This document shows positions 115 to 63,752 of a stretch of 64,000 bases of DNA, one piece after another. How positions within the stretch are numbered: position 1 is the stretch's first letter; each line of letters opens with the position of its first letter. Made by a program: the position numbers and the translations under genes. A model generated the notes under the pieces. That model ran no database searches. It saw only the letters and a program-made list of their open reading frames with translations, and was not told the DNA's origin. Origin of the DNA: Mytilus californianus (taxonomy: Eukaryota); contig NW_026262707.1 in NCBI RefSeq assembly GCF_021869535.1, positions 124,001 through 188,000 on the forward strand. Direction: 5' to 3'.

Positions 115-145
115 GTAAAAAACCTTGGTATCGGGAAGAATAAAC

Positions 146-3100
146 ATGGACTCAGAAAGAACTTTGCGTGAGGCGTATAGACTTACTCCAGAAGGACAAT
201 TGGTGTTTGAGGAGAGTGTAAGACAGTTTACTTCAAAACTACGAATTCAACACAGATATATAGACATGATTATGGGAGATATACATGAGCACACCCAGAT
301 GACTAAAACATTAGCTTGTACTTACAAGCAAGAACTAATGAAACATTTAAAGGAATATGAAGAAATTTCTCGCAAATATGACGACTATTTGGTTTCTCAA
401 CGGTGTGACGAAAGTTCTCGTGAGAGAGCTTCACATAGTATGATTGCTAGTTCGATACAACAGAAAGCCTCTATAGTAATAGATAATCTGGAAACAATGT
501 TGCAAGCCTTTGATATGGAAGAGCTACATAAAGTTAAAACTGAACAATTATCAGAAATCATTCAACCACCGGACGCTTTTAGAGAACCGTCAGATATTGG
601 TGTCGATAGAAAATCTAGATGTTCAAGAGGAAGTTCTTATCTTTCTCGGCAAAGAGCCAAAGTTGAAGCCGCAAAAACCAGAGCAAAATTTGCACAAGAA
701 GAAGTTGAACTTATGCGTAAACAAACAGCCATACAAGCAGACATGAAACTTTTAAGTGTGAAACGTGATATAGAGGAAGCTGAATGTGAACTCAGAGTCT
801 TGAATGAGAATTTTGATGACGATTGTGCTATTTCAGAACCAAATAAAGAAGACATCCAAAGACGTAATGCAGAATTCATACTAAAACAAACTGATCAAAA
901 TGACAATACGCCTTTAACTCAAAATTTAAATGTTGATGCACCTACGTTTATACCAGCAGTAGTAAGTCAAATCCCTACTGCCACGTTTACTCAGACAGAC
1001 GCATGTAGGGAGTTTACTCAATTCATTGTTAAAAAAAGACTTGTTATTATCAAGGCTCTGTAAATATGATGACACGCCTGGATATTTCTTAGCTTGGAAA
1101 GCTAGTTTTACAAATGTAATGCGTGAATTAAACGTTACTCCGTCTGAAGAAATAGACTTATTGGTTAAATGGTTGGGACCCGAAAGTTGCAAACAAGCAT
1201 CGAGCATTCGAGCAGCTAATGCAGGAAACCCATCTCAAGGTGTAGCCAGGATTTGGGCTAGACTTCAAGACAGATTTGGAAGTCCAGAAATTGTAGAAAG
1301 TGCTTTGCGTAAGAAACTCAATAACTTTGCCAAAATAAGTAATAAAGACAACAAACGTTTATTTGAGCTTTTTGATATAGTTTCAGAAATAGAAGCAGTT
1401 AAAGAGAATGACATGTATAGAAGTATTTTTAGTGTTTATGACTCATCGGCTGGCGTAAATATTATTATAGCAAAACTTCCATATAATATCCAAGAAAAGT
1501 GGACATCAGAGGCCACCAGATATAAGATTCAAAACCACTTGGTATATCCACCATTCACAGTATTCACCAAGTTTTTGCAAAGGATGGCAAAAATGAAAAA
1601 TGACCCCAGTTTTTTCTTCGAGGATTGTCGAGAAATCAAAGTACAGAATACTACTAATGCAACAAACAATCGTTATGGAAACACAAAAAATCAGTTATCT
1701 TGTGCACGTACTGAAACATCAGTGTTGAAACCGTTAGCAGATAAAGTAAAAAGTTCAGACTTGGTATGTCCTGTGCATGGAACAAGTCACTTATTGAATG
1801 ATTGCAGAGGTTTTCGCATGAAACCGATTTCAGAACGAAGGGAGTTCTTAAAAAAGAATGGAATTTGTTTTCGCTGTTGTGGGCCTAAGCGCCATCTAAG
1901 AAGAGACTGCAAAGAGTTCTTGAAATGTTCAGTCTGTCAGAGTCGGGAACACCCTTCTGGTTTACATACCGATATAGAGAGTATTAAAAATAACAACCCC
2001 CCAGAATCTCACGAGGGGGAGAATGAATCAGGAGAAGTTAAGACAGCATGCACACAAATATGTGGTCAAGTAACTGGCACAAGTAAGTCATGTTCAAAAC
2101 TAATGCTAGTAAAAGTGTATCCAAAAGGAAAACCCGAACAATCACGCATGATGTATTCTTTAATAGATGACCAAAGTAACAGGTCATTGGCCACTTCCAA
2201 CTTCTTTTATTTGTTTTGTGATAATGGACCTGAAACTGAATATGTTTTGTCGTCTTGTGCAGGAAAATTCACAACATCTGGACGTTTAGCTAGGGAATAC
2301 GTGGTAGAAACTTTAGATGGGTCTTGTGTGTTTGATTTACCAACTATCATCGAATGTAATGATATTCCGAACAATAGACAGGAAATAGCGTCACCTAATG
2401 TGGCTATTCAGTATCCTCATCTTGTAGACATTGCTCCTTACATTCCTGAAATCGATGAGCATGCACAGATTGATCTTTTGATAGGAAGAGATTTGATATC
2501 AGTACACCATGTACTCGATCAGCGTCTTGGCAAAGGTAACCTCCCATATGCACAGAAGCTGCCTTTAGGGTGGGCAATAATTGGTGAAGTGTGTCTCGGG
2601 AAAACTCATCCGCCTGGCATTCTAGATTGCGTAAATGTGAACAAGACGACCATTTTGAGTAATGGCCGTGCTACTTTTCTTAAACCTTGTCAAAATGAAT
2701 TACTAATAGATACGAATGTTTTCCGTACAACTGACAAAGATGAAAAAATTGGATCATCAATCGAAGACGATACATTCCTGAGGATCATGAATTCAGGTTT
2801 TGTTAAAGATTCAGATGGTTGTTGGGTTGCTCCATTGCCCTTCCGTGAGCATCGGCCAATATTAGAAAACAACAAACAATTAGCTTTAAAGAGAGCAAAA
2901 TCTTTCGATTACAGCTTGTAAATTAATTCTACAAAACGAGAACATGTCATACAATTCATGCAGAAAATCATCGAAAATGGTCATGCTGAAATAGCGCCAC
3001 CATTGGCTATATCGTCTGAATGTTGGTACTTACCTATGTTTGGGATATATCACCCCACAAAACCTGACAGTATCAGAGTTGTATTCGATGCATCCGCAGT

Positions 3101-6093
3101 GTGTAATGGTCATTCATTAAATAACATTCTGTTAAAGGGACCAGACCTCACGAACAGCCTGTTAGGGATTTTGCTTCGTTTTCGAAAAGAGGCTATAGCG
3201 GTAACTGCTGACGTCGAACAGATGTTCTATAATTTCAAAGTCAGTGAAGAGCATCGTAATTACCTTCGTTTTATTTGGCATACTGAAAATGACATTGAAA
3301 AACCATTGATTGATTACCGTATGACTGTTCACGTATTTGGTAACAGCCCCTCGCCGTCAGTGGCAACTTATAGACTTAGGAAATCTGCTGAAACTGCTGA
3401 TCAAGATGTGAAGGAGTTTGTAGATCGCAACTTTTACGTGGACGATGGTCTATTGTCGTGTCAAAATGTTGAGACAGCTGTTGATTTAGTTAAGAGAACA
3501 CAAAACGCATTGTTAAGGGGTGGTAATCTTAGGTTACATAAAATAGCCTCAAATAGCAAATATTTGTCAAGTCAGTTTCCCGTTGATGATCTGGCTAAAA
3601 ATCTCAAAGATCTGAAATTTGAAAATGACTGTTTACCTTTGCAAAGAAGCCTAGGTATGGCTTGGGATATTAACACTGACTGTTTTACCTTTCAAGTAGC
3701 ACATGACATCAAGCCATTTAGCAAGCGTGGCGTATTATCAACGATCAACTCTCTTTTTGATCCGATTGGCTTTACAGCCCGTGTCTCAGTTCGTGGTAAA
3801 CTTCTCTTACGTGATATGATGACTTCACTAGGACACACTGAATGGGATGACCCATTACCTGATACTTACCTACATCTATGGAAACAGTGGATTAATACGT
3901 TACCTGATCTTGGGCAATGATTTATTCCGCGTATGTATAGTGACATCTTCTATGCAGAAGCTTCGAACAAAGAAGTTCATATCTTTTGTGATGCTTCAAA
4001 AGAGGCAATAGGTGCGGTGGCTTATTTGAGATTAATTGACTCACACCATGTAACAGTTAGTTTTTTATTGGGAAAGGCGAAGGTTGCGCCTTCACATGGG
4101 AATACTATTCCTCGATTAGAACTGTGCGCCTCTGTGTTTGCGGCAGAATTATCTGATCTTGTCAACGAGCATTTAGGTATAGATCAAAGTGAAATGTACT
4201 TTTACTCAGACAGCAAAATAGTGTTGGGTTACTTGACAAATGAGTCAAAGAGGTTTCATGTATACGTTGGAAACCGAGTGCGACGAATTCGAGTCTCTAG
4301 TGATCCAAAAAGATGGAGACATGTTTCAACCGAAAATAATCCGGCAGATATCGCAACACGAGGAATTAACCCTGCAGAGTTATCGAATAGTATATGGATG
4401 AAGGGACCAGTATTTCTTTATAACGTGTCCCTTGGAAATTTAGATAATGGTCCACATCAGTTGGTTGATGCTGATAGTGACAAGGAGATTCGCCCAGATG
4501 TGCAAGTAGCTAAAACACAAACTGTAGATCGAAATAATCTACATAAATTAGGAACACATAGATTCTCAACATTTTCAGAATGGAGAACTTTAGTCAGAGC
4601 AATTTCCTTATTGAAACAACTTGTTAGAAATCTGGCACATCATAACGATAAACCTGAACATTTAGATGCATACAAACAACCAGATGCTTTGAAACGAGCC
4701 CAACAATTCATAATTCGTGAGGTTCAAATGGAAAATTATAGAAACGAAATAGACAATATCAGACAGGGAACATCGTTGCATAACAACAGTTCTCTCTCGC
4801 AACTATCGCCCATACTTGATGTTGATGACACCTTAAGAGTTGGTGGTCGCTTGCGAAATTACAAAGATTGTGCAGATCTTTCAAAACATCCTATTATCTT
4901 ACCAAAACACCACCATATATCATTACTTATTGTTCGACACTTCCATGAAAAAGTGGCTCATCAAGGCAGAAGCCTCACATATGGTGCTATCCGTACAGCT
5001 GGTGTTTGGATTTTAGGCAGTCGTCGTTTAGTTTCTTCAGTGCTTCATAAATGTGTGATATGTCGTAAGCTTCGTGGTTGTTTCGGTTGGCAGCAAATGG
5101 CAGATTTGCCTGAGGACAGATTAAAACCATCACCGCCATTTACATTCGTCGGTGTTGGACACTTTTGGCCCATGGCCCATAGCATATAGACGCACTCGTG
5201 TCATACCAGCTAATCAGAAAAGATGGGCACTTATGTTCACATGCCTCGTCAGCAGAGCAATTCATATAGAGGTCATAGAGGAGCTCAGCAGTGCTTCATG
5301 TATAAATGCGTTGCGTCGTTTCATTGCCTTAAGGGGTGAAGTTAAGCAGTTCCGTTCTGATAGGGGAACAAACTTTGTTGGCAGTTCAAAAGAGCTAAAT
5401 ATGATCACTGAATTGGTTGAAAAAGACTCTGTGAGAAGTTTTCTCTCAAACAACGACGTCTTGTGGCTTTTTAATCCTCCACACGCCTCCCACATGGAAG
5501 GAGTGTGGGAAAGGATGATTGGTGTTTCACGAAAGATTTTAGATTCTATGTTACTACGAGAAGGTTCAAAAACTCTTACTCATGAAGTACTTACTACCCT
5601 GTTATCGGAGGTAACAGCAATTGTAAATGCGAGACCCTTGGTTCCGGTGTCAGCTGACCCAGAATCACCATGTGTACTTTGTCCAGCAATGCTTCTCACA
5701 CATAAAATAAATCAGGACAATGTATCGTTTCCAACATTCGGAAATAAAGACATGTTGAAATCTCTATGGAAGCACACTCAGGTTCTAGCAGAAGAGTTTT
5801 GGAACCGCTGGCGTAACGAATATTTAAACCGTCTACAAACTCGACAAAAATGGACCCGTGAATACAGTAATATGAAGGAAGGCGATTTAGTACTCTTAAG
5901 AGACCGTGAATGTGCTCGCAACTATTGGCCAGTCGCAATTGTTGAAAAGACATTCTCTAGTTTTGATCAGAAAGTCAGAAAGGTTCAAATTCGTGTTGTG
6001 CGTGATGGGAAAGCAGTTAGTTATGTTAGACCAATCAACGAACTAGTAATGTTGGTAGAGCATGTGGAACTAAAACAAAGTGAAACAGATTAA
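146..6093 (+). pseudogene. BEL-A gag-pol polyprotein, disrupted
   Basis: Five ORF-track segments join into one polyprotein: Cys/His gag knuckles (CFRCCGPKRH), protease-like LIDDQS, RT YLPMFG/FYVDD, RNase H IFCDAS, integrase HHCC region and D-D-E (GVDTFGPW, SDRGTNF, GVWERMI). Lesions: +1 frameshift in an A7 run (~1031-1037), in-frame TAA 2919-2921, TGA 3918-3920, +1 frameshift ~5157. Confidence 0.93.
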
Positions 6094-7170: not shown

Positions 7171-7594
7171 GATTGATTGATTGTTGGTTGCCTAACGTCC
7201 AGTGGCAAATATTTCATGCATATTCAGGACGAGAACAAATTAACAATAAATACAATAGGTAGGTTCTGTAATAGGGGCGTCCGGGATTAAGGTCGGAGAA
7301 ATTTAGAATACCACGGGAAATGAGGGTATATTGGATAGGGACAGAAATTTAGCCTTGCAACAGGTCACCTACGGACCCCTCAAAGAGTTGTTGCAAGGGT
7401 TCTTAACGTGCAAAGAGTGTGGCACTCTCTTTACACGAGGCATCGGATTTAACGTCCCCATTCTGACCGGACGTGGCTGCAAATTTGTACATCCCGCACA
7501 GCCAAACGGACGCCCCACTTTAGCACGGGTTTTACTGCCAGTCGGAGGAAGACCAATGGTGACCATACTTCTATTCCCCAGTCACCCTCGGGGG
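7171..7594 (-). mobile_element. SINE-like retroposon, copy 1
   Basis: ~420-bp dispersed repeat; head CCCCGAGGGTGACTGGGG, tail (CAAT)n; no clear TSD in this copy. Confidence 0.88.
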
Positions 7595-8565: not shown

Positions 8566-11203
8566 GATACAATTACAAATACAAGTGGACGTTGCCGGGT
8601 ACTTGTACATCCCAACAACAAAAAGACACTTAGTACAGATCTGAGAGTACTCGCAGTTACTGACAGCTAGTTCAAAGCCACTAACAACTATAACAAAATT
8701 CATGCATCTAAGACTAATGTCATTTGTTCATGTGTTTAGATGTAGTTTTAAAACTTTTCTGAAAACCAGGATAGAAAAGCAACATTGCAGCTTTTAGAAA
8801 TGTTTAAAAACTGATATACTTTGCAATGCTTTGTGCGGTTATCAAATGAATTTCATAAAATCGTTGATAGTTTTCAAAATTTAGAAATTATTACTGACTA
8901 TTTTCAATAAGAATGTTCAAATGCTTAAAATGTACACACACACAAAAACCATGAAATTAATTGAAAAATTGTAAAGACGAGATTGTTCTTAACAGCCTAC
9001 AAGATACAATGTATATTGATCCAAAGAATTTTTTCAATCTCTAACTTTGTCCTATCAATATATTTCTTTCAGGTTTATATATGATCATATTAACATCATA
9101 CATTAATACTTTAATTATATACATACTTTACCTCTATTACAGCAAACCATGTATGTACCTATTCACATGACAAATGAACTTGCCAGGAAAGACCACATTT
9201 GTGAATCATCATACTCTACTTCCATATATGCTGTTGATGTAAAGGGTAAATATTTTTTATGCTGACCCCCCAAATAAATGTTCCAAACAAACGGTTTTTG
9301 TATGATTACTTTAGTATCCTCTTTTTCTTGGTTGAAATTAACTTTATACAGATGGAAAATATTTGGAAGGGGAAGAAACTGAATTTACTACTCTTTAGAG
9401 CCTCTAGTTTTTCTTTCTTTAATATGTTATTCTCATATTGCAGGTTTACAACATACATATAAAAAACCAGCTATGTAGATGTGAAGATCCTGCAGTCACC
9501 TTTATGCGTTACAGCTTATGGCCAGCTTCACCTACAAGCCCTAAAATTGGCTTTGATCTCAGATTCATGGAGCTATTGTCTGTTCTGCAACTTGAGAGCT
9601 GTTTATCTGCAAAATATGTTTGTGATGCTTTAGATGCTATGCACTCGGACTACATTAAATGAATCTCCAACGTTGCAAGTAAATTTAAACAGTTTTCCAA
9701 TGTCATAAAGTGTTCTCTCATTAGGCATTTGTTAGAAATACATCAGTATAGACAAAAGTATGTTAAAAGATTTTTAAAATATTTGTTGTCACAATGTGCT
9801 GTCTAGATTTAGACAAAAATAAGAAAAAAGATTAGAATTGTGGTTTTGTGCTAGAATGTAAAGATATTTGGTGCTTATCTTGCAAATTTAGTTTGTAAAA
9901 AAATGCTGGAATACTCGAGGTCTATTTTGTGCGTATATTAAGATTTGTTAATATCAGATATGGTCAAAGTTGAAGAAAAAAACAAATTTCACCAAGCTTC
10001 AGCTTACTTCAGATCAAGGACAACTGCTTTTAGAATCAGCTCAGACAAAGAGAAAAAACGCCTGTCTAGTTAAATTAAAGGAACTTGCAACTGACAGGCA
10101 ATATTTATCTAGCTTGAAGAAATATGCAGGTATGAAAATGTATAACAAGTATTATATACTTAAGAGCTGTTCCATTTAAACTTACATGGTACCAAGGGCA
10201 GACAATTTAAAACTTAATTAATCACCCATAGAGTCAAATTTATAATTTCAATTCAATTTTCAATGGATTTCATAACAATCTTTAAAATGGTTGTTATGTT
10301 TTATGGAACAGCCCTAATTTTTATAAATGGGGATAAACTGATTTTGATTCAAGCTTTATAAGTCAACCTATACAATGTGATAAATTTTAAGGTTTACCTC
10401 TCAGCAACTTTTTGTAAATAGCCATGTAGGAATTTTTTGTTGCATTTTTCTCGATAACTACAAATAAGTCCTTCGAAATTCAGAATCACGTGTCATATAA
10501 CCATGCTTTTCAGTGTGAATTGTTTTCATATACATTTCTTAACAACTTTCTATTTACATTAAACCAATAAATATAATTAATTTGTTATATTAATTTTGCA
10601 GAGGGTCAAGATATTGGAATCCGAATAAGCAAACAGTTCTCCAGCAACTTTATAAAGATAAAAAAAGAAGTGGACAAACTGAATGCTATTTCCCGCACAA
10701 ATTTGGATTCCAAACAGTTTCTGTCTTTAGAATCAGAAATATATGATCAGTTGGAAACGAGAAAGATCTCTGAAAACCAACAAAAGGCTGTTCAGTCCAA
10801 ATGTTTGATTGACCATGCAGAAGGAGAAAGTACTAATATTGACATTGAAATAAAAAAGTATTTACTTTATTTAAGTAAACAGAGTGAAGAAATAATTGAC
10901 ACAATCAACTGTCTTTTACCTTTAGAAGGAAACAGGTTCCATTTAGGCAAAATTAATTACCTCTTAGTGGAACATTTTAATATTGAAACTGTTTTTCATT
11001 CGTGTTTCACATTATTTGAACACACTGTTACAGATGTTTCTATTGTACCAAGAATAGTTCATGATAAATTGAATACAGAATTGTCAAGATCCTTAAATTT
11101 ACCAGCCGAAGAAGAAATAACAACAATTTTTCAGGAAATTGAGCAGTTTGAAAATAATGAATTGAACCGTATTTATATGGAAAAGGAGAGTGACGAGGGA
11201 GGA

Positions 11204-11621
11204 TTGATTATTGGTTGCTTAACGTCCAGTGGCAAATATTTCATGCATATTCAGGACAAGAACAAGTTAACAATAAATACAATAGGTAGGTTCTGTAATA
11301 GAGGCGTCTGGGATTGAGGTCGGAGAAATTTAGACTGCCACGGGAAATGAGGGTATATTGGATAGGGACAGAAATATAGCCTTGCAACAGGTCACCTGCG
11401 GACCCCTCAAAGAGTTGTTGCAAGGGTTCTTAACGTGCAAAGAGCGTGGCACTCTCTTTACACGAGGCATCGGATTTAACGTCCCCATTCTGACCGGACG
11501 TGGCTGCAAATTTGTACATCCCGCACAGCCAAACGGACGCCCCACTTTGACGAGGGTTTTACCGCCGGTCGGAGGAAGACCAATGGTGACCATACTTCTA
11601 TTCCCCAGTCACCCTTGGGGA
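11204..11621 (-). mobile_element. SINE-like retroposon, copy 2
   Basis: Full length; 12-bp TSD GACGAGGGAGGA (11192-11203 / 11622-11633). Confidence 0.93.
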
Positions 11622-13621: not shown

Positions 13622-14048
13622 TTGATTGATTGATTGATTGTTGGTTGCTTAACGTCCAGTGGCAAATATTTCATGCATATTCAGGACGAGAACAAGTTCA
13701 CAATAAATACAATAGGTAGGTTCTGTAATAGATTAAGGGGTTAAGGTCGGAGAAATTTAGACTGCCACGGGAAATGAGGGTATATTGGATAGGGACAGAA
13801 ATTTAGCCTTGCAACAGGTCACCTACGGACCCCTCAAAGAGTTGTTGCAAGGGTTCTTAACGTGCAAAGAGCGTGGCACTCTCTTGACACGAGGCATCGG
13901 ATTTAACGTCCCCATTCTGACCGGACGTGGCTGCAAATTTGTACATCCCGCACAGCCAAACGGACGCCCCACTTTAGCACGGGTTTTACTGCCGGTCGGA
14001 GGAAGACCAATGGTGACCATACTTCTATTCCCCAGTCACCCTTGGGGG
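13622..14048 (-). mobile_element. SINE-like retroposon, copy 3
   Basis: Full length; 14-bp TSD GAATTAAAGGGGGA (13608-13621 / 14049-14062). Confidence 0.93.
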
Positions 14049-14821
14049 GAATTAAAGGGGGAAAGAATCTATATACAAAACACACAACTTAGTACGTTGA
14101 AGCTGTATAAATGCTTAAAGATACTCCTCTAACAATTCTAAAATACAATTATATTTCAAAGTCTTATTGATTTTCAATATTTTGTGGGATTAGATCTTTC
14201 TCAATCCACTGGCGATGTTCAGCCAACTCATCCTTTTGGATCTGATTGCCAAGTGTCCTTTTTGGAGAAGTCTGAAACTAGCCTTCAAACAGGTTTATAC
14301 GTGATGTCCAATGTCAATTTATAGTCTTTGAATTTACTGGACTGCCGGGATGGTTGATGAGTTATGACACATGAACCCGTCTTGGACAATCTCCTCATCT
14401 GATGACAAGAATGAAGGTTTCATGACCTCATCAATCTTAGCCTTCTTCGTCACACTCAGCTCCATTTTGTCCAGTGCACTTAGTCTCCTTTTTGCTTTCA
14501 GAAAAGAAATACGTTTATGGTTTTATTATCATAGTTCCAATTGCTATAAATCGTAATAAAGGTATTGAATAGTGAATATGAATGGTTTGATTTAAATAGC
14601 AAGAATAAAGTTTTATGTCCTGAGTTTTATTTCTCTGATATATTATTAGGAAGATCAGATAAGGAAAATTGCACACTCAAAATATCCTACGGTAACCAAA
14701 AGAGTAAAATATAGACGGTTGGATGGACATGCGTAACACACAATGCTCCCCACGCCTAAAGCTGGGGCATAAAAATCTTTAAAAGTATATGATGCAAACA
14801 GCCAACTCACAACAAATGACA

Positions 14822-15242
14822 CCCCAAGGGTGACTGGGGGATAGAAGTATGGTCACCATTGGTTTTCCTCCGACCGACAGTAAAACCCCTGCTAAAGTGG
14901 GGCGTCCATTTGGCTGTGCGGGATGTACAAATTTGCAGCCACGTCCGGTCAGAATGGGGACGTTAAATCCGATGCCTCGTGTAAAGAGAGTGCCACGCTC
15001 TTTGCACGTTAAGAACCCTTGCAACAACTCTTTGAGGGGTCCGTAGGTGACCTGTTGCACGGCTAAATTTCTGTCCCTATCCAATATACCCCCATTTCCC
15101 GTGGCAGTCTAAATTTCTCCGACCTTAATCCCGGACACCCCTCTTAGAGAACCTACCTATTGTATGTGTTGTTAATTTGTTCTCGTCCTGAATATGCATG
15201 AAATATTTGCCACCTGACGTTAAGAAACCAACAATCAATCAA
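14822..15242 (+). mobile_element. SINE-like retroposon, copy 4
   Basis: Full length; TSD TCACAACAAAT(G/A)ACA on both sides; starts CCCCAAGGGTGAC, ends (CAAT)n. Confidence 0.92.
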
Positions 15243-15309
15243 TCACAACAAATAACAGATGCAATGTGATGGCTAAAAGCTTAATGAGACATGTAGTTTC
15301 AATTACCTG

Positions 15310-16790
15310 GTAATGTTTTCAGGTTTGGATGATGGAGGTGGTATTTCGTTTATGTCTTCTTCCTTCAATTCACAAAAGGGCTGCATTTGATTCATAAGTT
15401 GTCCCTTCTCTAATTTCACATGCAGATGTTTTCTGATTCCTCAACTTCAAAGAAAAACATATAGTTAATTTTTAATATGAATTTACATTGTTTGATGCTC
15501 TGTGGGTTTTTGCACGGAATGCTTGTGTCATCCGGTCTGTTTGTACAAAGCAAGTGCTTCATAGCTTGTCACTTTGGGTTATTCCTTGTCATTAATTCCG
15601 TATTTTTCGTCAAATTTTTGTTTGTACAAAGCAAGTGCTTTAGAGTTCTGTCCCATTGGGTTTTTCTTCATCTTTAATACCACACGCGCATTGTACACTT
15701 GTTTCATGACCACAATTTTTTCTGCCAACAGTTCAACATCGTCCCAACTTAAATCATCAGCAGCCATTAGATTTACCATTTTACTTGTAAATCCCGCGCA
15801 GCGAAACGGATGAAACATTTTGACAAGTGTTTAACTATCAGTCAGAATATGATCTGTAGTGACCATATTTCTATTCTCGGTCACCTTGACGGGCGAAAGG
15901 TACACGAATGCTAAGTGTTTTTGTTTTGGCAGACACTGTGCATTATGAGTTTTTCTGCCTGTGCCTGTTGATTTGGGAAAACTCCATTGGGACTGCAAAT
16001 ATTATTCTAATTTGATGTTCTCTGAGAAATAAATAATTCAACTACAACTTTAAAGGCTCATATAAAATTCGTAAGCAAAAGTTGCAGGATGTGGATATAG
16101 TCGCGTGACTGTCGCTGGAGATAAATTTAGCAACTTTACATTAGTGCAACTTTACAATAGTGCATTGACGGTGGTATTAGGAGTATGAATAAAAAGAAAA
16201 CATCGTGCGATCATCACCGAACAAGAGTAAATGAGACTGGACCAAAGATGCATTTAATATGTTAACTGTTGCTTAACATTGTTTATATCAATTTTCCAAT
16301 TGATGTTGATGGCAAAGTATCAGTGACATGTATGTTGGTATAGGCAATTTTGAAAACTAGATACTTTAAGCTCTATTTTTAACAAACAATTATTAAGATA
16401 TATACTTTTAGCTCCATTTTAACCAACAATTATTAAGATATAGAATTTTAACCATAGATATCCAACATTAATTCTGACAGCAAACTGTGTTTACGTAATT
16501 TATTCAGCAATATAGGAATGTCAAATTCAGCAATGTCCGAATAAAATGGATTTCATCTTTAAAGTGATGAAATCAATGAATTCAAGTACAACAATATGTA
16601 TATCTTTGCTGTCAACTGGTTTACCATGGTCACATCTGACCACATCAATCCTGTTGTTTCTGATACTTTGGGTGAAAGTGATTCCATAGGTGATATGTAT
16701 TGATTGAATATACTTGTACCAACAAATGCAGCTAGCTGAGTTATAACCGACATCCTTGCTAATCCTGGAATAAAAAAAAACAACAATTAC
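15310..16790 (-). pseudogene. Possible DEDDh (PML/DnaQ-like) exonuclease gene remnants, likely transposon-borne
   Basis: Fragments GLARMSVITQLAAFVGTSIFNQYISP, HGKPVDS...ILFGH, AGFTSKMVNLMAADDLSW and EIREGTTYESN..EEDINEIPPP resemble invertebrate exonuclease-domain proteins from memory. Frameshifted, and segment order is uncertain. Confidence 0.38.
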
Positions 16791-18385: not shown

Positions 18386-19591
18386 CAGTGAACGAGTGAT
18401 ACGCAAAAGTCTGTGAGGTCTTCCAGTAGGACTATCGTGTATTCTTGGTCCAACTGTTCTCAGCATTTGCATTATCGTTTCTGGTGTTTCCCCACAAGAA
18501 CGATAAAATGCTTAACGATGATTTGAAAAAAAGACAAACACATCTCTACCATGCCACATCTCATTTCTTCCTTCAGAAGCACGATGATAAATATCTAAAG
18601 TTGGTTCTGGAGGAGGACGAATTAGCAGCAAAATTAAGGTGAAAGTATTCTCAAATATTTAAGACGGATCCGACGGTGGAGTTACCAAATACTGAATTAA
18701 AGCTGATATACTTTTATACATTGTGACTTGGGTGGAAAGTTGTCTCATTTGCACTCATACCACCTCTTGCTATATATATGATATAGTTGCAATATCCATA
18801 ATGACCTGAAAAAATTGTAGTAAATTAAAAAAAAAAAGTAAAGAAACAAAGCTACATTTATTCGGAACTATAAGACTAACTATGGAGAAGAAAACAAACT
18901 CGTATTTTCCTTACCCAGATATAATGCTATGCCTAATTAAAAATCATTTTAAAAGAAATTGAAAATGAACAGTACATAAGATTTATTATATTCCTACTTA
19001 CTGAAGGCTTTAAAAGAGTTAGAAATTGAAATCATCCCTTCTTCAATTTTACGGACATCATCACGAGATGGTTGACTGTATCCGTTCCTAATGTCGTAAC
19101 TACAATCCTGTCCCATTTTCACGAAAGTGACCTACCCAATAAGACTTATAACCGGGTTTGTGCTAACATTACAACATCACGGGTGCCACATGTAGATCTC
19201 CTTATCCTTCCGGAGCAATTTTTGGTGAGGTTCGTGTTGCTCAGTCACTAATTTTCTATGATGTATGAGGTGTACAGTTGTTCTTTTCTTTTTTTAGTGT
19301 TGTCAATTAATCAATTATGTAGAAAAATGGTGAATTCAATCTGGTTTTAGAGCTGCTGTAATACAATGTAACGATGACATGGTAGGATTTGGGAAAACTT
19401 TAACTTGTTTTTCAACGGCATTTTTGTTATTTTTATCGCTAATATTCCCTCTGTTATCTCATCCGTTTGTATTAAGATGTTCAAAATAGTATGTGCATGC
19501 TCGTTTAAACACTTCAAAACTAGACGTGCTGAAAAACAGCCGTAGGCCACAAACGGTCAATTTATAACTTCATTGTTCTTATCTTGTTGCA

Positions 19592-20160
19592 CCCAAGGGT
19601 GACTGGTCATTGGTCTTCCTCCGACCGGCAATAAAACCCTTGCTAAAGTGGGACGTCCGTTTGGCTGTGCGGGATGTACAAATTTGCAGCCACGTCCGGT
19701 CAGAATAGGGACGTTAAATCCGATGCCTCGTGTAAAGAGAGTGCCACGCTCTTTGCACGTTAAGAACCCTTGAAACAACTCTTTGAGGGGTCCGTAGGTG
19801 ACCTGTTGCAAGGCTAAATGTCTGTCCCTATCCAAAATACCCTCATTTCCTGTGGCAGTCTAAATTTCTCCGACCTTAATCCCGGAAGCCCCTATTACAG
19901 AACCTACCTATTGTATTTATTTTTAATTTGTTCTCGTCTTGAATATGCATGAAATATTTGCCACTTGACGTTAAGCAACCAACAATCAATCAATCAATCA
20001 ATATACCCTCATTTTCCATGGCAGTCTAAATTTCTCCGACCTTAATCCCGGACGCCCCTATTACAGAACCTACCTATTATATGTATTGTTATTTTGTTCT
20101 CGTCCTGAATATGCCTGAAATATTTGCCACTGGACGTTAAGCAACCAACAATCAATCAAT
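19592..20160 (+). mobile_element. SINE-like retroposon, copy 5, with duplicated 3' segment
   Basis: One 14-bp TSD CTTATCTTGTTGCA (19578-19591 / 20161-20174) encloses a near-full copy (deletion in head) plus a second 3' ~160-bp segment (20001-20160). Confidence 0.9.
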
Positions 20161-20658: not shown

Positions 20659-20910
20659 TTATTTATTTTTATGGTTTTTCATATGTCGACTCAGGCTCGA
20701 CCGGTAACCAAAGGTCGTGTTGCACACGGAACATCTGTATGGGTTATCTCCACTATGCGAATTCATGTGATCCTTAAGGCTGATAGAGTCTTCAAATGAA
20801 CTACCGCACTTATCACATTTATGCTTCAGTGATTTTCCTCCCTCCGTTTCATTGTGGCGCTTCAAATCCTCCTCAGAATAAAACATTGTATTACAACTAT
20901 CACATTTAAA
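20659..20910 (-). pseudogene. C2H2 zinc-finger exon (3 fingers) truncated by a SINE tail
   Basis: CDSC..RH (second His missing), CDKC..HMNSH, linker SGDNPYR, CSVC..HMKNH, stop. The apparent N-terminus MIDCWLPNVQ is the antisense SINE tail at 20910-20944. Confidence 0.72.
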
Positions 20911-22001
20911 CTGGACGTTAGGCAACCAACAATCAATCAATCAATGCGGATAAATTACAAATATTGTTTCATTCAAAAAGAAGTTGGAATATATTATAAA
21001 ATATAAAAATGTATAAAATTAAAATGATTTTAATTTTTCTTGATTTAGACTTGAGTTTTTTAAAAATATACTTTAAATTGTTAAATATTTGAATTAGCTC
21101 TCGCAGCGATAAAGCCTTTTTGCGCTCATGTGTTGTAAAGCAAACACCAATCAATCAATCAATCAATTAATGCGGATATGTATTCAATGCCGCTGGGTTA
21201 ATTGGTCACATATTTGCGTTAAATGGTTACAATGTTCCCATTTTTAAGTATAAATTTTGTTTATTTAAAAGTTCTAGAAAAAATACAAAAATTATTTTGA
21301 CATGTTTTTAAAAAAAAAGAAAAAAACTCAAAACTGAAAAGTGAATATTTGTACCGTGACTTTCTATCCAACATTCGACATACTCATCATGAGTATGTTG
21401 CTGGGATCTGATATAACGTTTGAATGTATGATACATATAACAATATTTTTACACAAGGTCCAAGGATTATGATAATCATATATACTTATATACTGATTTC
21501 CATTTTAAAATTTTGTTTGATGTTTAGGTAAAGAACCTTATTGGACTAACTTGGTATCTTAATCTCCAAGTCTAATTACTACCTTTTTGATACACAAAAT
21601 ATAGTGCATTGATCATAACATTCTATATCCTATCCATGAACATTTCCAGATATTTATCTATGTAATATATGCTCTAATATTCAGGGCACACAATGATGTT
21701 ACACTTGTCAAGAAAATTACATAACTTTTGCATGGTGCGGGAATCTAATGGCTGTTCTAAAAATATAAATGATGTTACTGTTAAAGTCCTCTTAAAAATA
21801 TGGAATTCCCTTCTTTTGTTTAGAATTGCTGATAAATCAACAACAAAATGTACAACCAATGCAATAATAAATTTTACTTCCCACTAATAAATTGAAGCAA
21901 TTTCTACCCGTCTTCAGTGCTCCGTTTAGGTTAATTACAAGTCTATCTAGTATTTCATTTTTAATGAAGTAGCTTGATCAAGTGGTTGAATCTTTTAAAA
22001 T

Positions 22002-22380
22002 GATTGATTGATTGTTGGTTGCTTAACATCCAGTAGCAAATATTTCATGCATGTTCAGGACGAGAACAAATGAACAATAAATACAATAGGTAGGTCCTGT
22101 AAAACAGGTCAACTGGGTTGCAGGTCGGGGGAATTTGGACTGCCACGGGAAAATGAGGGTGTATTGAATAAGAACAGAAATTAAGCCTTGCAACAGGCCA
22201 CCTGCGGACCCCTCAAAGAGTTGTTGCAAGGGTTCTTAACGTGCAAAGAGCGTGGCACTCTGACTGCTTACTTATACATCCCGCACAGCCAAACAGACGT
22301 CCCAATTTGGCAAGGGTTTTACTGCCGGTCGGAAGAAGACATGTAGTGAACATATTTCAATTCCCCAGTCAACCTTGGGG
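22002..22380 (-). mobile_element. SINE-like retroposon, copy 6 (older, internal deletion)
   Basis: More diverged; ~55-bp deletion near 22260; imperfect TSD ATCTT(T/G)T(T)AAA. Confidence 0.85.
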
Positions 22381-28562: not shown

Positions 28563-28580
28563 GTGAAAAGATCCATCAGC

Positions 28581-31500
28581 ATGGCGACAAGTGGTGATGG
28601 AGAGGAGGAAGGAAGGACAAAACATTTAACACCGAAAGCATATGAACAATACCTAGGTGAGGTTGATAAATATTCACAAGCATTAGCTACACTAAGCAGG
28701 GAAAATGACAGACTTATCTCTATTTTGCTATCCAATGAAGCAAGGCATGAGGAAATAGCTTCAGCAGCTGCCCAACTGGAAGAAACAACAAATAAATACA
28801 TTAACTTATCTGATTGTTATATAGATTATTTGAAACGTAAAAATACACTCGACAGTCAACGCGAACTCATAGCCCATCAGTTAATACGCAGTGTCAACAT
28901 GCATAAAACTGAAACTGCAATGAATTATTCTTTATCAAAGTTAAAACCTCATGAACCTACTCAAGCTTTCATACAAACAGGTGAACAGGTGAAAAAAGAC
29001 ACTACTACTCCAGTAACAGATGTTCAAATGAAACAAGAATTGAAAAAAGAACCTAATGTCAGCAACTCAGTTAGGAGCCATAGATCAAGCACATCTAGAC
29101 GATCAGGGCGTAGCAATGCTAGCTCTACAATGATGCGACAGAAAGCTAATTTAGAGGCAGCCAGAAAGAGGTTAGAGTATGTCGACCAAGAATCAACCCT
29201 TGTGCAACAGAAAGCACAACTAGAAGCGAACACTACTTTAGAAAAAGCGAAACTTGAGAAAATGACAAAAGAATTAGAAGCAAAACGTGACGTAGCAGTT
29301 GCAGAGGCTGAACTGCATGCTATGGAGGAAGTATTTGATGAATCAGACAGGGAAACAGAGGTTTCATCCCCATCGTTAACTGAACAACGAACGGCTAAGT
29401 ATATTATTGAGCAAAGTAAACATGTTAACAGGCAATACGAGGTTCACAACAGTGCAGCTGTTAACAACATAGACACACAAACTTCCTTACACAATGAGGA
29501 AAACATGAATGAAGAAACGCCGGTTCACTACAGTGCGCCAGCTGTGAACAACATTGACACACAAACTTTCTTACGCAATGACGAACACATGAATGAAGAA
29601 CTGCCTATACAGAGAACTGGAAAAATAGCAAGTCAAGTGTCAAGTGCAAATCAAATTGTGCAACAAATACATAAAGAGACAATTGAACAAATTCCTGATA
29701 CAAACAACAACAGAACATTAAGTCTAAACTATGGCCAGGAACTTTCAAAATTTTTGATGAAAAAGGACTTAATAATATCTAGACTTTTGAAATATGATGA
29801 CCGTCCAGAGAATTATTTATCATGGAAAGACACTTTTAAATGTGTAATGTCAGAAATCGACGCGAGTCCTGCTGAAGAAATTGACCTAATGATCAAATGG
29901 CTAGGACCTGACTCATCACGTCAAATTAACAGCATCAAAATTTCAAATTCAGGAAATCCAACTGTGGCATTATCACGTGCTTGGAACAGATTAGTTCTAC
30001 GTTATGGTTGCCCAGAAATGATCGAAAGTGCCCTGCAGAAAAAATTACAGGCTTTTCCAAAGATAACATATAAAGATAAGAAAAAATTGTTTGAACTTTC
30101 AGATGTATTATCAGAAATACGTTCAGTTAAAGAAAAACAAGAATATGCAGCACTACTAGCATATTTCGACACATCCGTCGGTGTGAATCCTACAATTGTC
30201 AAACTTCCTATTAACCTGCAAACTAAATGGCGAGATAGAGCAGTAACATACAAACGAATACATTCAGTTCTATATCCACCATTCACATACTTTTGTGACT
30301 TCATCAATGACATGGCTTCAACTATAAATGATCCTAGATTTATATTTGAAAGCGATACATATGTTGCCCCCAAGAACGAAGACAAACCATTTAAGACACG
30401 ACAATTTGCTGTTAAAAAGACAAATGTTTCACAAGACAAACATGAACCACACGCCAATGAAAACTCTAAAATGCGTTGCGCCATACATAATAGCGATCAC
30501 TTACTGGATGAGTGCCGTGCTTTTAGACACATGAGTATTGTAGATAGGAGAGCTCTACTGAAGAAAAATGGTTTGTGTTTTAAATGTTGTGTTGGGAGAC
30601 ACATTTTTCGCAATTGTGACAAGAATGTTTTATGTTCTGAATGCAAAAGTACTGATCACACAGCGGCTATGCACATTTACGCAAGTCAGGATAGAGTCCA
30701 GAAACCCAACAACAGTCAAGGCGGGGAGAGTTCTGTTAACTCGAAATGTACTCAAATTTGTGGAAATACATTTGCAGGAAAATCATGTGCAAAAATTGTG
30801 TTGGTTAATGTAAGACATACAACAATGGATAAACAGCCAATCCGTACTTATGCAATCATAGACGAACAAAGCAACTGTTCATTAGCAAGGAAAGAGTTAT
30901 TAGACTATTTTGAGGTGAATACTGAACCAGAACAATATTCACTTGCTAGTTGTAGTGGTCAGTTTACTATGACCGGTAGGAGAACAAAGGGTTTCATAAT
31001 TGAATCGCTTGAAGACAATTACTGCATAGATCTCCCAACTTTAATTGAGTGTGACTCAATACCAAATAATAGACAAGAAATTCCGACAAATGAAATTGCT
31101 CAAGCTCATCCTCATTTGCAATCTATTGCACACATGATACCGCACCTTGATAAGGATGCTGAAATTTTACTCCTTATAGGGAGAGATGCAGTGGAAGCTC
31201 ATCACATACTGGAACAAAGGCTAGGAAGTCATAATCAACCATTTGCTCAGAAGCTCAAGATGGGATGGGTTATTGTAGGCGAGACTTGTCTGGATGGAGC
31301 GCATTACCCTAGCACTGTCAATGCTATGAAAACTTTTGTACAACAAGATGGGAGGCCATCAATATTTGAACCATGTGACAATAGTATTCATATTTCAGAA
31401 AAATTATCAACGTCTTTGTTTAAACTTGAGCCTGATGACAACCGCCAAGGTATGTCAATTGAAGACAAAAAGTTTATGCGCTTAATGTCAGATGAAATAC

Positions 31501-32778
31501 AACAAGATGAAAATCAAAACTGGACTGCTCCACTTCCCTTCAAGAAATCACGTCTGTTACTACCAAATAATCGTCTACAAGCTCTAAATCGAGCAAGAGC
31601 CTTTGATATAAGTTTGCGTAAAGATCCTGTTAAAAAACAACATGTCTTAGACTTCATGAAAACTCTTTTTGACAATAATCATGCTGAACGAGCACAAAAT
31701 ACAGAGACTCCGAAAGAAATGTGGTATCTTCCTATGTTTGGGGTGTATCATCCGAAAAAGAAGGATCGCATTAGAGTTGTTTTTGACTCATCCGCTAAAT
31801 TTCAAGGAACTTCTCTAAACGACGTATTGATGACAGGACCAAACCTTGTTAACAGCTTGCTTGGAGTTTTATTGAGGTTTCGGAAGGATAAAATTGCAAT
31901 TACAGCAGACATTCGACAGATGTTCTATAGTTTCAATGTAACGCCAGAGCATAGAGATTTTCTTAGATTCATATGGCATGAAGGCAATGATATGGAGAAA
32001 GATTTAGTGGACTATAGAATGGCTGTTCATGTGTTTGGAAACAGCCCTTCTCCAGCTGTCGCAACCTTTGGCTTACGTAAAACCGCTGAAATGGCAGAGT
32101 CAAAATATGGATCAGATGTAGTAACCTATGTAAATAATAACTTTTATGTGGATGATGCACTGTCTTCTCATTCAAACAGTGACAAGGCAGTAGACTTGTT
32201 AAAAAGAACTCAATCTGCATTGCAAGAATTCGGCAATTTACGCCTGCATAAAATATCTTCAAATTCGAATGAAGTTCTGGCAGCATTCGAAAAAGACGAT
32301 TTATCTGAAGATTTGAAAAATCTTGACTTTAGTGACGATTGTCTTCCTGTACAGCGTAGTCTTGGGGTCAGTTGGAATCTTCAGTCGGATAACTTTACCT
32401 TTCAAGTATCATTAGACAATAAACCATTTACTAGACGTGGTGTACTTTCAGTTATCAATGGACTGTACGATCCATTAGGTTTTGCGGCACCAGTAACCAT
32501 TGCTGGAAAACTTATTCTTCGTGAAACTATGAAAGAATCCACTGAATGGGACGAACCATTACCTCCGCAATTTCAGTCGAAATGGCAATCTTGGAAAGAT
32601 TCTCTTCAACTTCTCCAACAAGTGGAGATACCTAGAAACTACAGTTCAGACTGGACACTTAACAAGGACCTCTGTATATTTTCTGATTCATCTGAAAAAG
32701 CTGTTGCGGCAGTTGCCTACATACGAACTACTGATAAGAATGGAACAACACATCTTGGATTTGTACTAGGAAAAGCTA
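28581..32778 (+). CDS. BEL-B gag-protease-RT-RNaseH(N), 5' part of interrupted polyprotein
   Basis: Open frame from ATG 28581 with CFKCCVGRH/CSEC knuckles, AIIDEQS, FYVDD, IFSDSS; ends at ...LGKA at the insertion site. Confidence 0.93.
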
Positions 32779-63328: not shown

Positions 63329-63752
63329 TTTGATTTATTGTTGGTTGCTTAACGTCCAGTGGTAAATATTTCATGCATATTCAGGACGAGAACAAATTAA
63401 CAATAAATACAATAGGTAGGTTCTGTAATAGAGGCGTCCGGGATTAAGGTCGGAAAAATTTGGACTGCCACGGGAAATGAGGGTATATCGGATAGGGGCA
63501 GAAATGTAGCCTTGCAACAGGTCACCTACGGACCCCTCGAAGAATTGTTGCAAGGGTTCTTAACGTGCAATAAGCGTGGCACTCTCTTTACATGAGACAT
63601 CGGATTTAACGTTCCCATTCTGACCAGATATGGCTGCAAGTTTATACATCCCGCACAGCCAAACGGACGCCCTACTTTGGCTAGGGTTTTACTGCCAGTC
63701 GGAGGAAGACCAATAGTGACCATACTTCTATTCCCCAGTCACTCTTGGGGAG
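63329..63752 (-). mobile_element. SINE-like retroposon, copy 7
   Basis: Full length; 13-bp TSD CAAATGATACACA (63316-63328 / 63753-63765). Confidence 0.92.

What the first reader, a model, noticed from the sequence alone, without database searches (positions are those of the whole stretch)
14822..14856. SINE-like family begins with a predicted H-type pseudoknot instead of a tRNA head, with a compensatory pair change
Seen: TSD-defined 5' ends coincide at CCC(C)AAGGGTGACTGGGGAATAGAAGTATGGTCACC. This gives stem 1 CCCCA/TGGGG, a 2-nt loop, stem 2 GGTGAC/GTCACC and a 12-nt A-rich loop. Copy 7 has AGTGAC/GTCACT (63715-63720, 63738-63743), a double compensatory change; copy 1 has a G-U-preserving change in stem 1. 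No A/B boxes are visible. Copies 5 and 6 break the structure. Inference: the uniform 5' end is set or protected by RNA structure (processing signal, exonuclease block or promoter), making this a non-tRNA, non-7SL, non-5S headed SINE.
Basis: partly seen in the sequence, partly recalled or inferred. Interest (0 to 1): 0.75.

Follow-up and report, generated by a model that had tools for sequence, protein, structure and literature searches.

The report
Mussel SINE start, pseudoknot unproven
The flagged bases are the first 36 letters of a very abundant, recently active ~420-base jumping element (SINE-like) of a mussel. It has no recognisable tRNA-type head. The letters can be drawn as a neat pseudoknot, but nothing I could test shows that the knot forms or sets the element's start.

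Summary
The sequence observation holds. Window 14822-14857 is the 5' end of a ~420-nt retroposon with 12-16-bp target duplications, a 3' stem-loop and a (CAAT)n tail. At least 3,800 copies in the 1.65-Gb genome carry this exact head.

- **5' end:** it is uniform to within about 3 nt.
- **Head ancestry:** tRNA, 5S, 7SL, snRNA and ribozyme models find nothing.
- **Pseudoknot by sequence:** CCCCA/UGGGG (1-5/14-18) with GGUGAC/GUCACC (8-13/31-36) is perfect and rare in shuffles (8 of 20,000 at nt 1).
- **No covariation for stem 1:** it never varies between subfamilies.
- **A rival pairing:** the same CCCCA pairs equally well with a second UGGGG at 77-81, closing a cloverleaf-like fold that nearest-neighbour energies prefer.
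- **Stability:** the folds are no more stable than shuffled sequence.
- **The "double compensatory change":** it sits in two independent loci genome-wide against 20 uncompensated ones (P about 0.07), and its T was probably inherited.
- **RNA reads:** no pile of starts at nt 1, and most reads run on into flanking sequence.
- **The only master-level compensatory change:** it lies in another hairpin (55-72).

Verdict: a real SINE with an unclassified head and an unproven pseudoknot. The scan has flagged this same family before on other DNA, and the follow-ups reached the same conclusion.

The parts
14807..14821 (+). Upstream target-site duplication TCACAACAAATGACA of the flagged copy.
   Evidence: It matches 15243-15257 with one mismatch.
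14822..15242 (+). Flagged full-length copy of the ~420-nt SINE-like retroposon (subfamily A1, 96% identical to the consensus).
   Evidence: BLAST and alignment. The genome holds thousands of copies.
14822..14826 (+). 5'-terminal CCCCA. It is the 5' strand of proposed stem 1, and also the 5' strand of the alternative closing helix with 14898-14902.
   Evidence: Sequence. Pair counts are 94.1% paired for either partner, with no change on both sides.
14829..14834 (+). GGTGAC, the 5' strand of stem 2 (hairpin I).
   Evidence: Pair 8-36 is G-C in A1/A2 and G-U in A3/A4.
14835..14839 (+). TGGGG, the 3' strand of proposed stem 1.
14840..14851 (+). A-rich 12-nt loop (loop 3 of the proposed knot, or the loop of hairpin I). 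Position 26 (A/G) is the only subfamily difference within nt 1-35.
14852..14857 (+). GTCACC, the 3' strand of stem 2.
14861..14875 (+). Hairpin II, GGTC / 7-nt loop / GACC. The subfamily change falls in the loop.
14876..14893 (+). Hairpin III (element 55-72). It holds the only compensatory change between subfamily consensus sequences (A58-U69 in A1, G58-C69 in A2), plus G55-U72 changing to G-C in A3/A4.
14898..14902 (+). Second TGGGG (element 77-81). It is the alternative partner of the 5' CCCCA and closes a cloverleaf-like three-hairpin domain.
   Evidence: This is the minimum-free-energy fold of nt 1-82.
15184..15219 (+). 3' stem-loop, CGTCC...GGACG in the consensus (this copy has a substitution in the loop side). 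It is the presumed recognition hairpin for the partner LINE's reverse transcriptase. Tail-only mini-copies begin at its base.
15229..15242 (+). (CAAT)n-type microsatellite tail.
15243..15257 (+). Downstream target-site duplication TCACAACAAATAACA.
7175..7593 (-). Copy 1 (98% identical to the consensus). It carries A5>G, giving G-U in stem 1. This copy was used for laying reads.
11202..11620 (-). A full-length copy with TSD CCTCCCTCGTC.
13632..14047 (-). A full-length copy with TSD CCCTTTAATTC.
19591..19991 (+). A copy with an internal deletion that removes element nt ~17-36 (copy 5, knot destroyed).
22006..22380 (-). An old copy (about 76-79% identical, A3-like, with an internal deletion). Stem 2 is broken at two pairs (copy 6).
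63332..63750 (-). Copy 7 (94% identical to the consensus), with A8/T36 at the closing pair of stem 2.
15785..15891 (-). An old fragment of the head (element 1-115, about 71-73% identical) that abuts an unrelated low-copy repeat. It is not a second family.

Best explanation
These bases are the 5' terminus of a high-copy, recently active, LINE-dependent non-autonomous retroposon (SINE-like) of a Mytilus-type mussel. Its head has no detectable small-RNA ancestry.

Shown:
- The element has target-site duplications, a 3' stem-loop with a (CAAT)n tail, and 5'-truncated relatives.
- It forms several subfamilies.
- Its start is uniform.

Inferred:
- The uniform start is most simply the transcription start of source copies, driven by a promoter inside the conserved 5' region. 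The polymerase is unknown. Pol III is mildly favoured because the most prolific subfamily has no T4 run.
- Local hairpins at 8-36, 40-54 and 55-72 probably form in the RNA, because every subfamily-defining change in nt 1-82 is either unpaired or keeps a pair.
- The H-type pseudoknot is one of two mutually exclusive pairings for the terminal CCCCA. The other is with UGGGG at 77-81. I put the chance that the knot is a working element at about 0.2.
For: Retroposon anatomy and abundance:
- TSDs flank 55 of 66 copies, the start is C4-6 plus or minus a few nt, and a (CAAT)n tail is present.
- 3,831 exact 32-mer heads occur in the genome.
- Copies are 98-99% identical to the consensus.
- Near-identical words occur in runs of four coded organisms.

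No small-RNA ancestry:
- Rfam gives nothing at the gathering score or at E<=10, and ARAGORN gives nothing.
- The best A-box-like match is internal, at 69-79, with two mismatches.

Structure:
- Subfamily changes are at 26, 38, 39 and 47 (unpaired); 36 (G-C to G-U); 58+69 (A-U to G-C); and 72 (G-U to G-C).
- The pseudoknot is rare in shuffles, 26 of 20,000.

Polymerase: subfamily A1 has no TTTT, A2 has one and A3 has two.

No other head-bearing family: the head was found in no other element family, neither in 300 kb nor among 245 filtered genome hits.
Against: - No promoter has been identified. The head lacks A/B boxes, and the element starts with C's, which is unusual for both Pol II and Pol III starts.
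- RNA reads show no discrete transcript start. However, that library is ordinary cDNA, only about 6% of it was read, and it would under-sample small Pol III RNAs.
- The first 35 nt are not significantly better conserved between subfamilies than the rest: 1 difference against about 2.9 expected.
- Fold energies are no better than shuffles.
- The sample of copies was chosen by similarity to two query copies, so it is not unbiased.
Confidence: 0.6

Rival explanations
1. The H-type pseudoknot forms in the RNA and defines or protects the 5' end, as a processing signal, a self-cleaving motif, an RNase P-type substrate or an XRN1 block. Copies embedded in host transcripts could then release a full-length template.
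For: - The knot is perfect and stereochemically sound: a 5-bp stem 1, a 2-nt loop 1, no loop 2, a 6-bp stem 2 and a 12-nt A-rich loop 3.
- It starts exactly at nt 1.
- It is rare in shuffles (8 of 20,000 at nt 1).
- Its letters are identical in subfamilies A1-A4.
- There is a precedent for a 5' module that is both promoter and ribozyme in LINE/SINE-like elements: Pr77/L1TcRz (PMC3185411, PMC3383444).
Against: - Stem 1 shows no covariation.
- The pairing with 77-81 is as good, and nearest-neighbour energies favour it by several kcal/mol.
- No ribozyme or xrRNA family matches at E<=10.
- No P3/L3 lies between the stem-2 5' strand and the stem-1 3' strand, so the fold is not HDV-type.
- RNA reads show no pile of starts at nt 1, and reads cross the 5' boundary (50 or more against a depth of about 130).
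- A small dispersed subfamily with a shortened stem 2 (...ATAGTCTACAGG...) exists on three contigs.
- A8 mutants are 20 uncompensated against 2 compensated, as expected for neutral decay.
Confidence: 0.12
2. The head is a module taken from the 5' UTR of a LINE, as in the 'LP-SINEs' of gastropods and bivalves. It serves as an internal (possibly Pol II) promoter, so the conserved letters are protein-binding DNA rather than RNA structure.
For: - LP-SINEs with a ~70-bp LINE-derived head in place of, or in front of, a tRNA head are described in oysters, scallops, abalone and periwinkles (PMC4758252).
- This head is of unknown origin and lies upstream of weak internal A/B-like boxes at 69-79 and 141-149. 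That layout resembles pectinoid MESC SINEs, where a LINE piece was added in front.
Against: - No LINE or other family with this head was found in 300 kb or among 245 filtered genome hits.
- No canonical poly(A) signal lies near the tail.
- The 2016 survey did not list Mytilus.
- The reference LINE 5' ends (Nimb-17_LMi, I-3_DR, RTE-9_CPB) were not available to compare.
Confidence: 0.18
3. The first ~81 nt are a very degenerate tRNA-derived head: a cloverleaf-like four-way junction that begins at nt 1. On this reading the element is an ordinary tRNA-type SINE that has drifted beyond recognition.
For: - The minimum-free-energy fold of nt 1-82 is a closing helix plus three hairpins.
- A 2-nt spacer follows the closing helix.
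- The middle hairpin has a 7-nt loop.
- Subfamily changes respect the three hairpins.
Against: - The tRNA covariance model and ARAGORN find nothing, even at lax thresholds.
- Arm sizes and spacers do not fit a tRNA: an 8-bp first arm with a 13-nt loop, a 10-nt third loop, and 4 nt before the 3' strand.
- No A or B box sits at the expected places.
- The fold is no more stable than shuffles.
Confidence: 0.1

Closest known systems
LP-SINEs (SINEs with a LINE 5'-UTR-derived head) of gastropods and bivalves, Matetovici et al. 2016 (PMC4758252)
   Same: - Both are mollusc SINE-like retroposons with variable-length TSDs and 3' short tandem repeats.
- In both, the first several dozen bases are not derived from tRNA, 5S or 7SL.
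- In both, the polymerase is unknown.
   Different: - Homology of this head to the Nimb/RTE 5' UTR module could not be tested.
- No LINE with this head was found.
- No poly(A)-signal-like hexamer lies just before the tail.
- The family is not reported for Mytilus.
Pr77 / L1TcRz of trypanosomatid L1Tc, NARTc, ingi/RIME (PMC3185411, PMC3383444)
   Same: A conserved module of about 77 nt at the very 5' end of a LINE and of its non-autonomous partners. Its RNA folds into a pseudoknotted structure that begins at nt 1.
   Different: - That module is a demonstrated HDV-like double pseudoknot with P1, P1.1, P2, P3 and P4, and has promoter activity.
- Here only a P1/P2-like pair of helices can be drawn, with nothing where P3/L3 should be.
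- No Rfam HDV-type match was found, and RNA reads give no evidence of cleavage.
tRNA-derived HCD SINEs of bivalves (V, Meta, Deu, CORE, MESC superfamilies; PMC11481361, PMC4758252)
   Same: - Same host group, size range and modular build (head, body, LINE-type tail with microsatellite).
- Same high copy number, with subfamilies.
   Different: - Those have recognisable tRNA heads with A and B boxes. This one does not.
- Membership of its body in one of those superfamilies was not tested.

Membership tests
SINE (non-autonomous LINE-mobilised retroposon) | Short, non-coding and dispersed in many copies, with variable-length target-site duplications. | tested here: met
   The element is about 420 nt. 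TSDs of 10-17 bp flank 55 of 66 copies. At least 3,831 exact heads occur in the genome.
SINE (non-autonomous LINE-mobilised retroposon) | A 3' end of LINE type: a stem-loop and/or short tandem repeats, with 5'-truncated copies. | tested here: met
   A CGTCC...GGACG hairpin with a (CAAT)n tail is present, and truncated copies start at 222-368. The partner LINE itself was not found.
SINE (non-autonomous LINE-mobilised retroposon) | A head derived from a small Pol III RNA with an internal promoter. | tested here: not met
   No Rfam family matches at E<=10 and ARAGORN finds nothing. No A or B box lies in nt 1-60.
tRNA-derived SINE (SINE2) | A tRNA-like sequence or cloverleaf detectable by tRNA models, with box A near +10 and box B near +55. 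| tested here: not met
   The best A-like box is at 69-79 (2 mismatches). The strict B box has 3 or more mismatches everywhere.
LP-SINE | The first ~70 nt are homologous to the 5' UTR start of Nimb/RTE LINEs. | not testable with these tools
   The reference LINE sequences are not held. The paper's figures and supplements are not available as text.
LP-SINE | A LINE in the same genome shares the head. | tested here: inconclusive
   None was found in 300 kb or among the 245 genome hits of head core plus non-SINE continuation.
HDV-like self-cleaving ribozyme | A nested double pseudoknot starting at +1, in the order P1, P2, P3/L3, P1 3' strand, P1.1, P4, J4/2 with a catalytic C, P2 3' strand. | tested here: not met
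   The stem-2 5' strand is followed directly by the stem-1 3' strand, so there is no room for P3/L3. With the alternative P1 partner at 77-81 only a 4-nt L3 is possible and P1.1 cannot pair (inspection). No HDV-type Rfam hit appears at E<=10.
Other self-cleaving ribozymes (hammerhead, twister, pistol, hatchet) and xrRNAs in Rfam | A match to the family covariance model. | tested here: not met
   cmscan of 14780-15260 at E<=10 returned only two unrelated weak hits outside the head.
H-type RNA pseudoknot (structural class) | Two stems with crossing topology and loop lengths able to span the grooves. | tested here: met
   Stem 1 is 5 bp, loop 1 is 2 nt, loop 2 is 0, stem 2 is 6 bp and loop 3 is 12 nt. 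This holds on paper only.
H-type RNA pseudoknot (structural class) | Evolutionary support: compensatory changes in both stems. | tested here: not met
   Stem 1 has 0 pairs with a change on both sides. Stem 2 has one pair, in 2 cells. Shuffles reach the observed count 229 times in 500. The genome 2x2 table gives P about 0.07.

The most novel reading that the evidence does not exclude
The terminal 36 nt are a working RNA pseudoknot, possibly switching with the 1-5/77-81 pairing. The knot marks or shields the 5' end of the SINE RNA. This would be a new kind of SINE head that owes its defined start to RNA structure rather than to a small-RNA promoter.
Probability: 0.1. Interest if true: 0.7.

Novelty: new member of a known kind. 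Interest (0 to 1): 0.3.

Why it matters
SINE heads are almost always copies of tRNA, 5S or 7SL genes, because those carry the internal Pol III promoter. Families without such a head raise the question of how a retroposon renews its promoter and its exact start at every jump.

This mussel family is abundant and young, which makes it a practical system for asking that by 5'-end mapping and promoter tests.

As it stands, the finding adds one more unclassified-head SINE in a mollusc and a drawable but unsupported pseudoknot. The structural claim should not be carried forward without experiments.

Tried and rejected
- **A second family ('B') sharing the head, seemingly with a register-shifted compensated stem 1 (window 15785-15891 and loci L003/L004).** Rejected. 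Its body has only 12 genome matches. The part after nt 115 is a separate repeat that occurs elsewhere without the head. The locus is a five-fold segmental or haplotig duplicate.
- **Divergent head variant 'D' (L028:1950).** Only two near-identical copies exist, so it is a decayed copy.
- **Partner LINE through the tail.**
  - A loose-end consensus from RNA reads led to a single-copy locus.
  - A pattern of tail plus non-SINE upstream gave 93 hits. Nearly all were tail-only mini-insertions starting at nt 362. The one recurrent context was a mini-insertion inside an unrelated 6-kb repeat.
- **LINE or source gene through the head.** A pattern of head core plus non-SINE at 83-87 gave 245 hits. The 100 listed were indel variants, the A4 subfamily and truncated copies. 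The C13 locus has no ORF.
- **Covariance model of the head over 300 kb.** It found no new families.
- **Literature search for the element's own sequence strings.** No paper holds them.
- **Conservation of nt 1-35 as a sign of constraint.** Not significant.
- **Thermodynamic support.** z-scores are +0.1 to +0.9.

Full report
**What is there**

Window 14822-15242(+) is one copy of a ~420-nt repeat. It is flanked by the duplication TCACAACAAAT(G/A)ACA and ends in CAATCAATCAA. Six more copies lie in the window, at 7175-7593(-), 11202-11620(-), 13632-14047(-), 19591-19991(+), 22006-22380(-) and 63332-63750(-). The 30-nt head motif occurs five times in the window. No shuffle of the window gave a match.

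The window belongs to a 1.65-Gb assembly of 175 contigs. Earlier notes of this scan call it a Mytilus mussel. An exact 32-nt head string occurs 3,831 times in the genome. Sampled copies are mostly 95-99% identical to their consensus, so the family is large and young. Near-identical words occur in sequencing runs of four coded organisms.

**The 5' end**

I collected 66 full-length copies from about 300 kb (the window plus fetched loci). Of these, 55 have a 10-17-bp target duplication. The element then begins with a run of 4-6 C, often preceded by one to three extra bases, most often A. No copy continues upstream into a longer element. No tRNA gene lies within 300 nt of any of about 90 copies.

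**Ancestry of the head**

- Rfam at gathering thresholds finds nothing in any copy.
- At E<=10 on the flagged copy it finds only two irrelevant weak hits outside the head.
- ARAGORN finds nothing in the window copies or in the consensus.
- The best A-box-like string is internal (TGCTAAAGTGG at 69-79, two mismatches).
- A loose B-box-like string sits at 141-149. A Pol III start governed by these two boxes would fall near +55, not at nt 1.

By every detector on hand the head is therefore not tRNA, 5S, 7SL or snRNA.

**The pseudoknot on paper**

In the consensus, C1-A5 pair with U14-G18 and G8-C13 pair with G31-C36. Loop 1 is 2 nt, there is no loop 2, and loop 3 is a 12-nt A-rich stretch. This is a textbook H-type geometry.

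A Watson-Crick knot of at least this quality appeared in 26 of 20,000 dinucleotide shuffles of nt 1-40, and 8 of those started at nt 1. In the 64-kb window such knots occur at 19 start positions per strand, a count that includes the SINE copies themselves. As a pattern it is rarer than chance, though it was picked post hoc.

**Tests of whether the knot matters**

1. *Thermodynamics.* Nested folds of nt 1-35, 1-82, 1-90 and 1-130 are no more stable than shuffles (z from -0.4 to +0.9).
2. *A competitor.* The same CCCCA is complementary to a second UGGGG at 77-81. The minimum-free-energy fold of nt 1-82 uses that pairing to close a cloverleaf-like domain of three hairpins (8-36, 40-54, 55-72), at -23.3 kcal/mol. 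The three hairpins alone give -16.3, so the closure is worth about -7. For the knot, the first hairpin must shrink from 8 to 6 bp (+2.1), and the usual pseudoknot penalty eats most of stem 1's stacking. My rough estimate for the knot is -16 to -19 kcal/mol. That estimate is my own arithmetic, not a pseudoknot-aware program.
3. *Covariation among copies.* On 51 distinct heads, stem 1 has no pair with a change on both sides. It has 15 unpaired cells against 7 wobble cells. Stem 2 has one pair (8-36) with two doubly changed cells. Shuffles reach the observed number of covarying pairs 229 times in 500. The alternative helix 1-5/77-81 has the same 94.1% pairing.
4. *Covariation among subfamilies.* This is the level at which selection on source genes could show. 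Consensus sequences of A1 (45 copies), A2 (17) and A3 (8) differ at about 35 of 420 positions. Nt 1-35 hold one difference, at position 26 in the loop, against about 2.9 expected. That is not significant, and several other 35-nt stretches are as conserved.
   - Stem 1 never varies, so it offers no evidence either way.
   - The closing pair of stem 2 is G-C in A1/A2 and G-U in A3. In the abundant A4 type it stays G-U after a 2-nt deletion.
   - The only true compensatory change between consensus sequences is in hairpin III (A58-U69 in A1, G58-C69 in A2). There is also G55-U72 changing to G-C.
   - The other diagnostic changes in nt 1-82 (26, 38, 39, 47) are unpaired.
   - This modestly supports the three local hairpins, not the knot.
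5. *The claimed double compensatory change (copy 7, A8/T36).* Genome-wide, with otherwise exact heads of the same type, the counts are G8/C36 3,831, G8/T36 75 and A8/C36 20. A8/T36 gives four rows: the window copy, its haplotig twin on C128, and a tandem pair on C99. That is two independent events against about 0.4 expected, P about 0.07. Twenty of 22 A8 mutants are uncompensated, as neutral decay predicts. Copy 7 also carries older-type marks (…GCCAAAGT…), and T36 is the older consensus. Its A-U pair is therefore probably one mutation on a G-U background. The G-U change in copy 1 is private to that copy.
6. *A subfamily with a shortened stem 2.* A small dispersed group on three contigs has a shortened stem-2 3' strand (…ATAGTCTACAGG…). 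A source with a damaged hairpin could therefore still make a few copies.

**RNA evidence**

Reads were laid on copy 1 with its flanks.

- A 2026 raw-read RNA run gave 853 reads from about 6% of the run. Of these, 83% run on for 20 or more letters into sequence unlike the flanks.
- The best-supported loose ends come from single loci.
- No position gathers read starts or ends. At least 50 reads cross the 5' boundary where the depth is about 130.
- Depth is 3-5 times higher for first mates on the + strand. If the library is of the usual stranded kind, this means sense transcripts of this minus-strand copy.

Most SINE-containing RNA is thus part of longer host transcripts, and there is no sign of cutting at nt 1. 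This does not exclude a rare or small Pol III transcript, which such a library would miss.

**Origin of the head**

I looked for any other element with this head.

- An apparent second family next to the flagged copy (15785-15891, minus strand) turned out to be an old head fragment joined to an unrelated low-copy repeat, in a region duplicated five times.
- BLAST and a covariance model over 300 kb found only copies of this family.
- A genome pattern of head core followed by non-SINE letters at 83-87 gave 245 hits. The 100 listed were indel variants, the A4 type and broken copies. One recurrent non-SINE continuation on contig C13 is a truncated head with no reading frame behind it.

The closest published kind is the LP-SINE of gastropods and bivalves. 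Its first ~70 nt come from the 5' UTR of Nimb/RTE LINEs and may act as a Pol II promoter (PMC4758252). I could not compare sequences because the reference LINEs are not held and the figures are not available as text.

The two helices here have the P1/P2 topology of that fold, but there is nothing where P3/L3 should be. The alternative P1 partner allows only a 4-nt L3 without P1.1 (inspection). No HDV-type model matches.

**Polymerase**

The most prolific subfamily, A1, has no run of four T in 419 nt. A2 has one and A3 has two. This fits avoidance of Pol III terminators, but 14% of mononucleotide shuffles also lack TTTT. No canonical poly(A) signal precedes the tail. The polymerase is undecided.

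**Verdict**

The element is a genuine, abundant SINE-like family with an unclassified head. The pseudoknot is drawable and unusual but has no support from covariation, energy or RNA reads, and it competes with an equally good nested pairing.

I put about 0.6 on the ordinary reading (internal-promoter head with local hairpins, the knot incidental or unproven). I put 0.1-0.2 on a working knot.

This scan has flagged the same family on other pieces of this genome (s1-312211, s1-312226, s1-302607, s1-312231). The two follow-ups reached the same conclusion independently of the tests made here.

**Limits**

- No unbiased set of hundreds of copies could be built.
- No other species and no partner LINE could be examined.

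Noticed in passing
window 20910-20938; L054:2051-2102; L050:2098-2140; depth step at window 7232-7234: Many insertions consist only of the last ~58 nt of the element plus the (CAAT)n tail, each with its own TSD. They start exactly at the base of the 3' stem-loop (element nt 362, TCGTCC...). 93 genome hits of a filtered pattern nearly all end at ...CAGGACGA followed by random sequence. Depth over the tail is about 2 times the body in a DNA-like run and 10-30 times in one RNA run. This is a second discrete 5' end in the same family and remains unexplained. It could be a preferred stop of reverse transcription, a cleavage product, or a tail shared with other elements.
   Followed up: partly
consensus of subfamilies A1-A3 (e.g. 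window 14822-15242): The youngest and most numerous subfamily has lost the only T4 run (CATTTTCCC became CATTTCCC near nt 274). Older subfamilies have one or two T4 runs. This fits Pol III terminator avoidance but is not significant on its own (14% of shuffles lack TTTT).
   Followed up: partly
window 14890-14971 (element 69-149): A weak A-box-like string (TGCTAAAGTGG, 69-79) and a loose B-box-like string (GTTAAATCC, 141-149) lie inside the element. This could be the remains of a tRNA-type part sitting behind an added 5' module. No tRNA model detects it.
   Followed up: partly
window ~14800-15900 versus G000 contigs C128, C94 and C24 (two places): The flagged copy and its neighbourhood are present at 97-100% identity at four other places (loci L002-L004, L032-L035). 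The 'best genomic matches' to this copy are therefore haplotig or segmental duplicates, not independent insertions.
   Followed up: yes
TSDs of ~55 copies (window and loci L005-L072): Target duplications very often begin with TC, ATC or CA, overlapping the end of the CAATC tail repeat. This suggests microhomology between the tail and the nicked target, or a TC-preferring endonuclease.
   Followed up: no
window 15045-15110 (element ~225-290): The body stretch GTGACCTGTTGCAAGG...CTCATTTCCCGTGG recalls, from memory only, the conserved core of CORE-SINEs, which are reported in bivalves. It was not tested because no reference core sequence is on hand.
   Followed up: no
window 7175-7593, RNA run X21: RNA reads over the element are 3-5 times more frequent in one orientation (probably sense). 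Several loose-end clusters come from single loci, so a few host transcripts carrying sense copies dominate the signal.
   Followed up: no
window 125-6093, 28563-32792, 57368-59326: Long reading frames carry Pao/BEL-type peptidase, reverse transcriptase and integrase domains (BEL/Pao LTR retrotransposons). They are unrelated to the finding.
   Followed up: no
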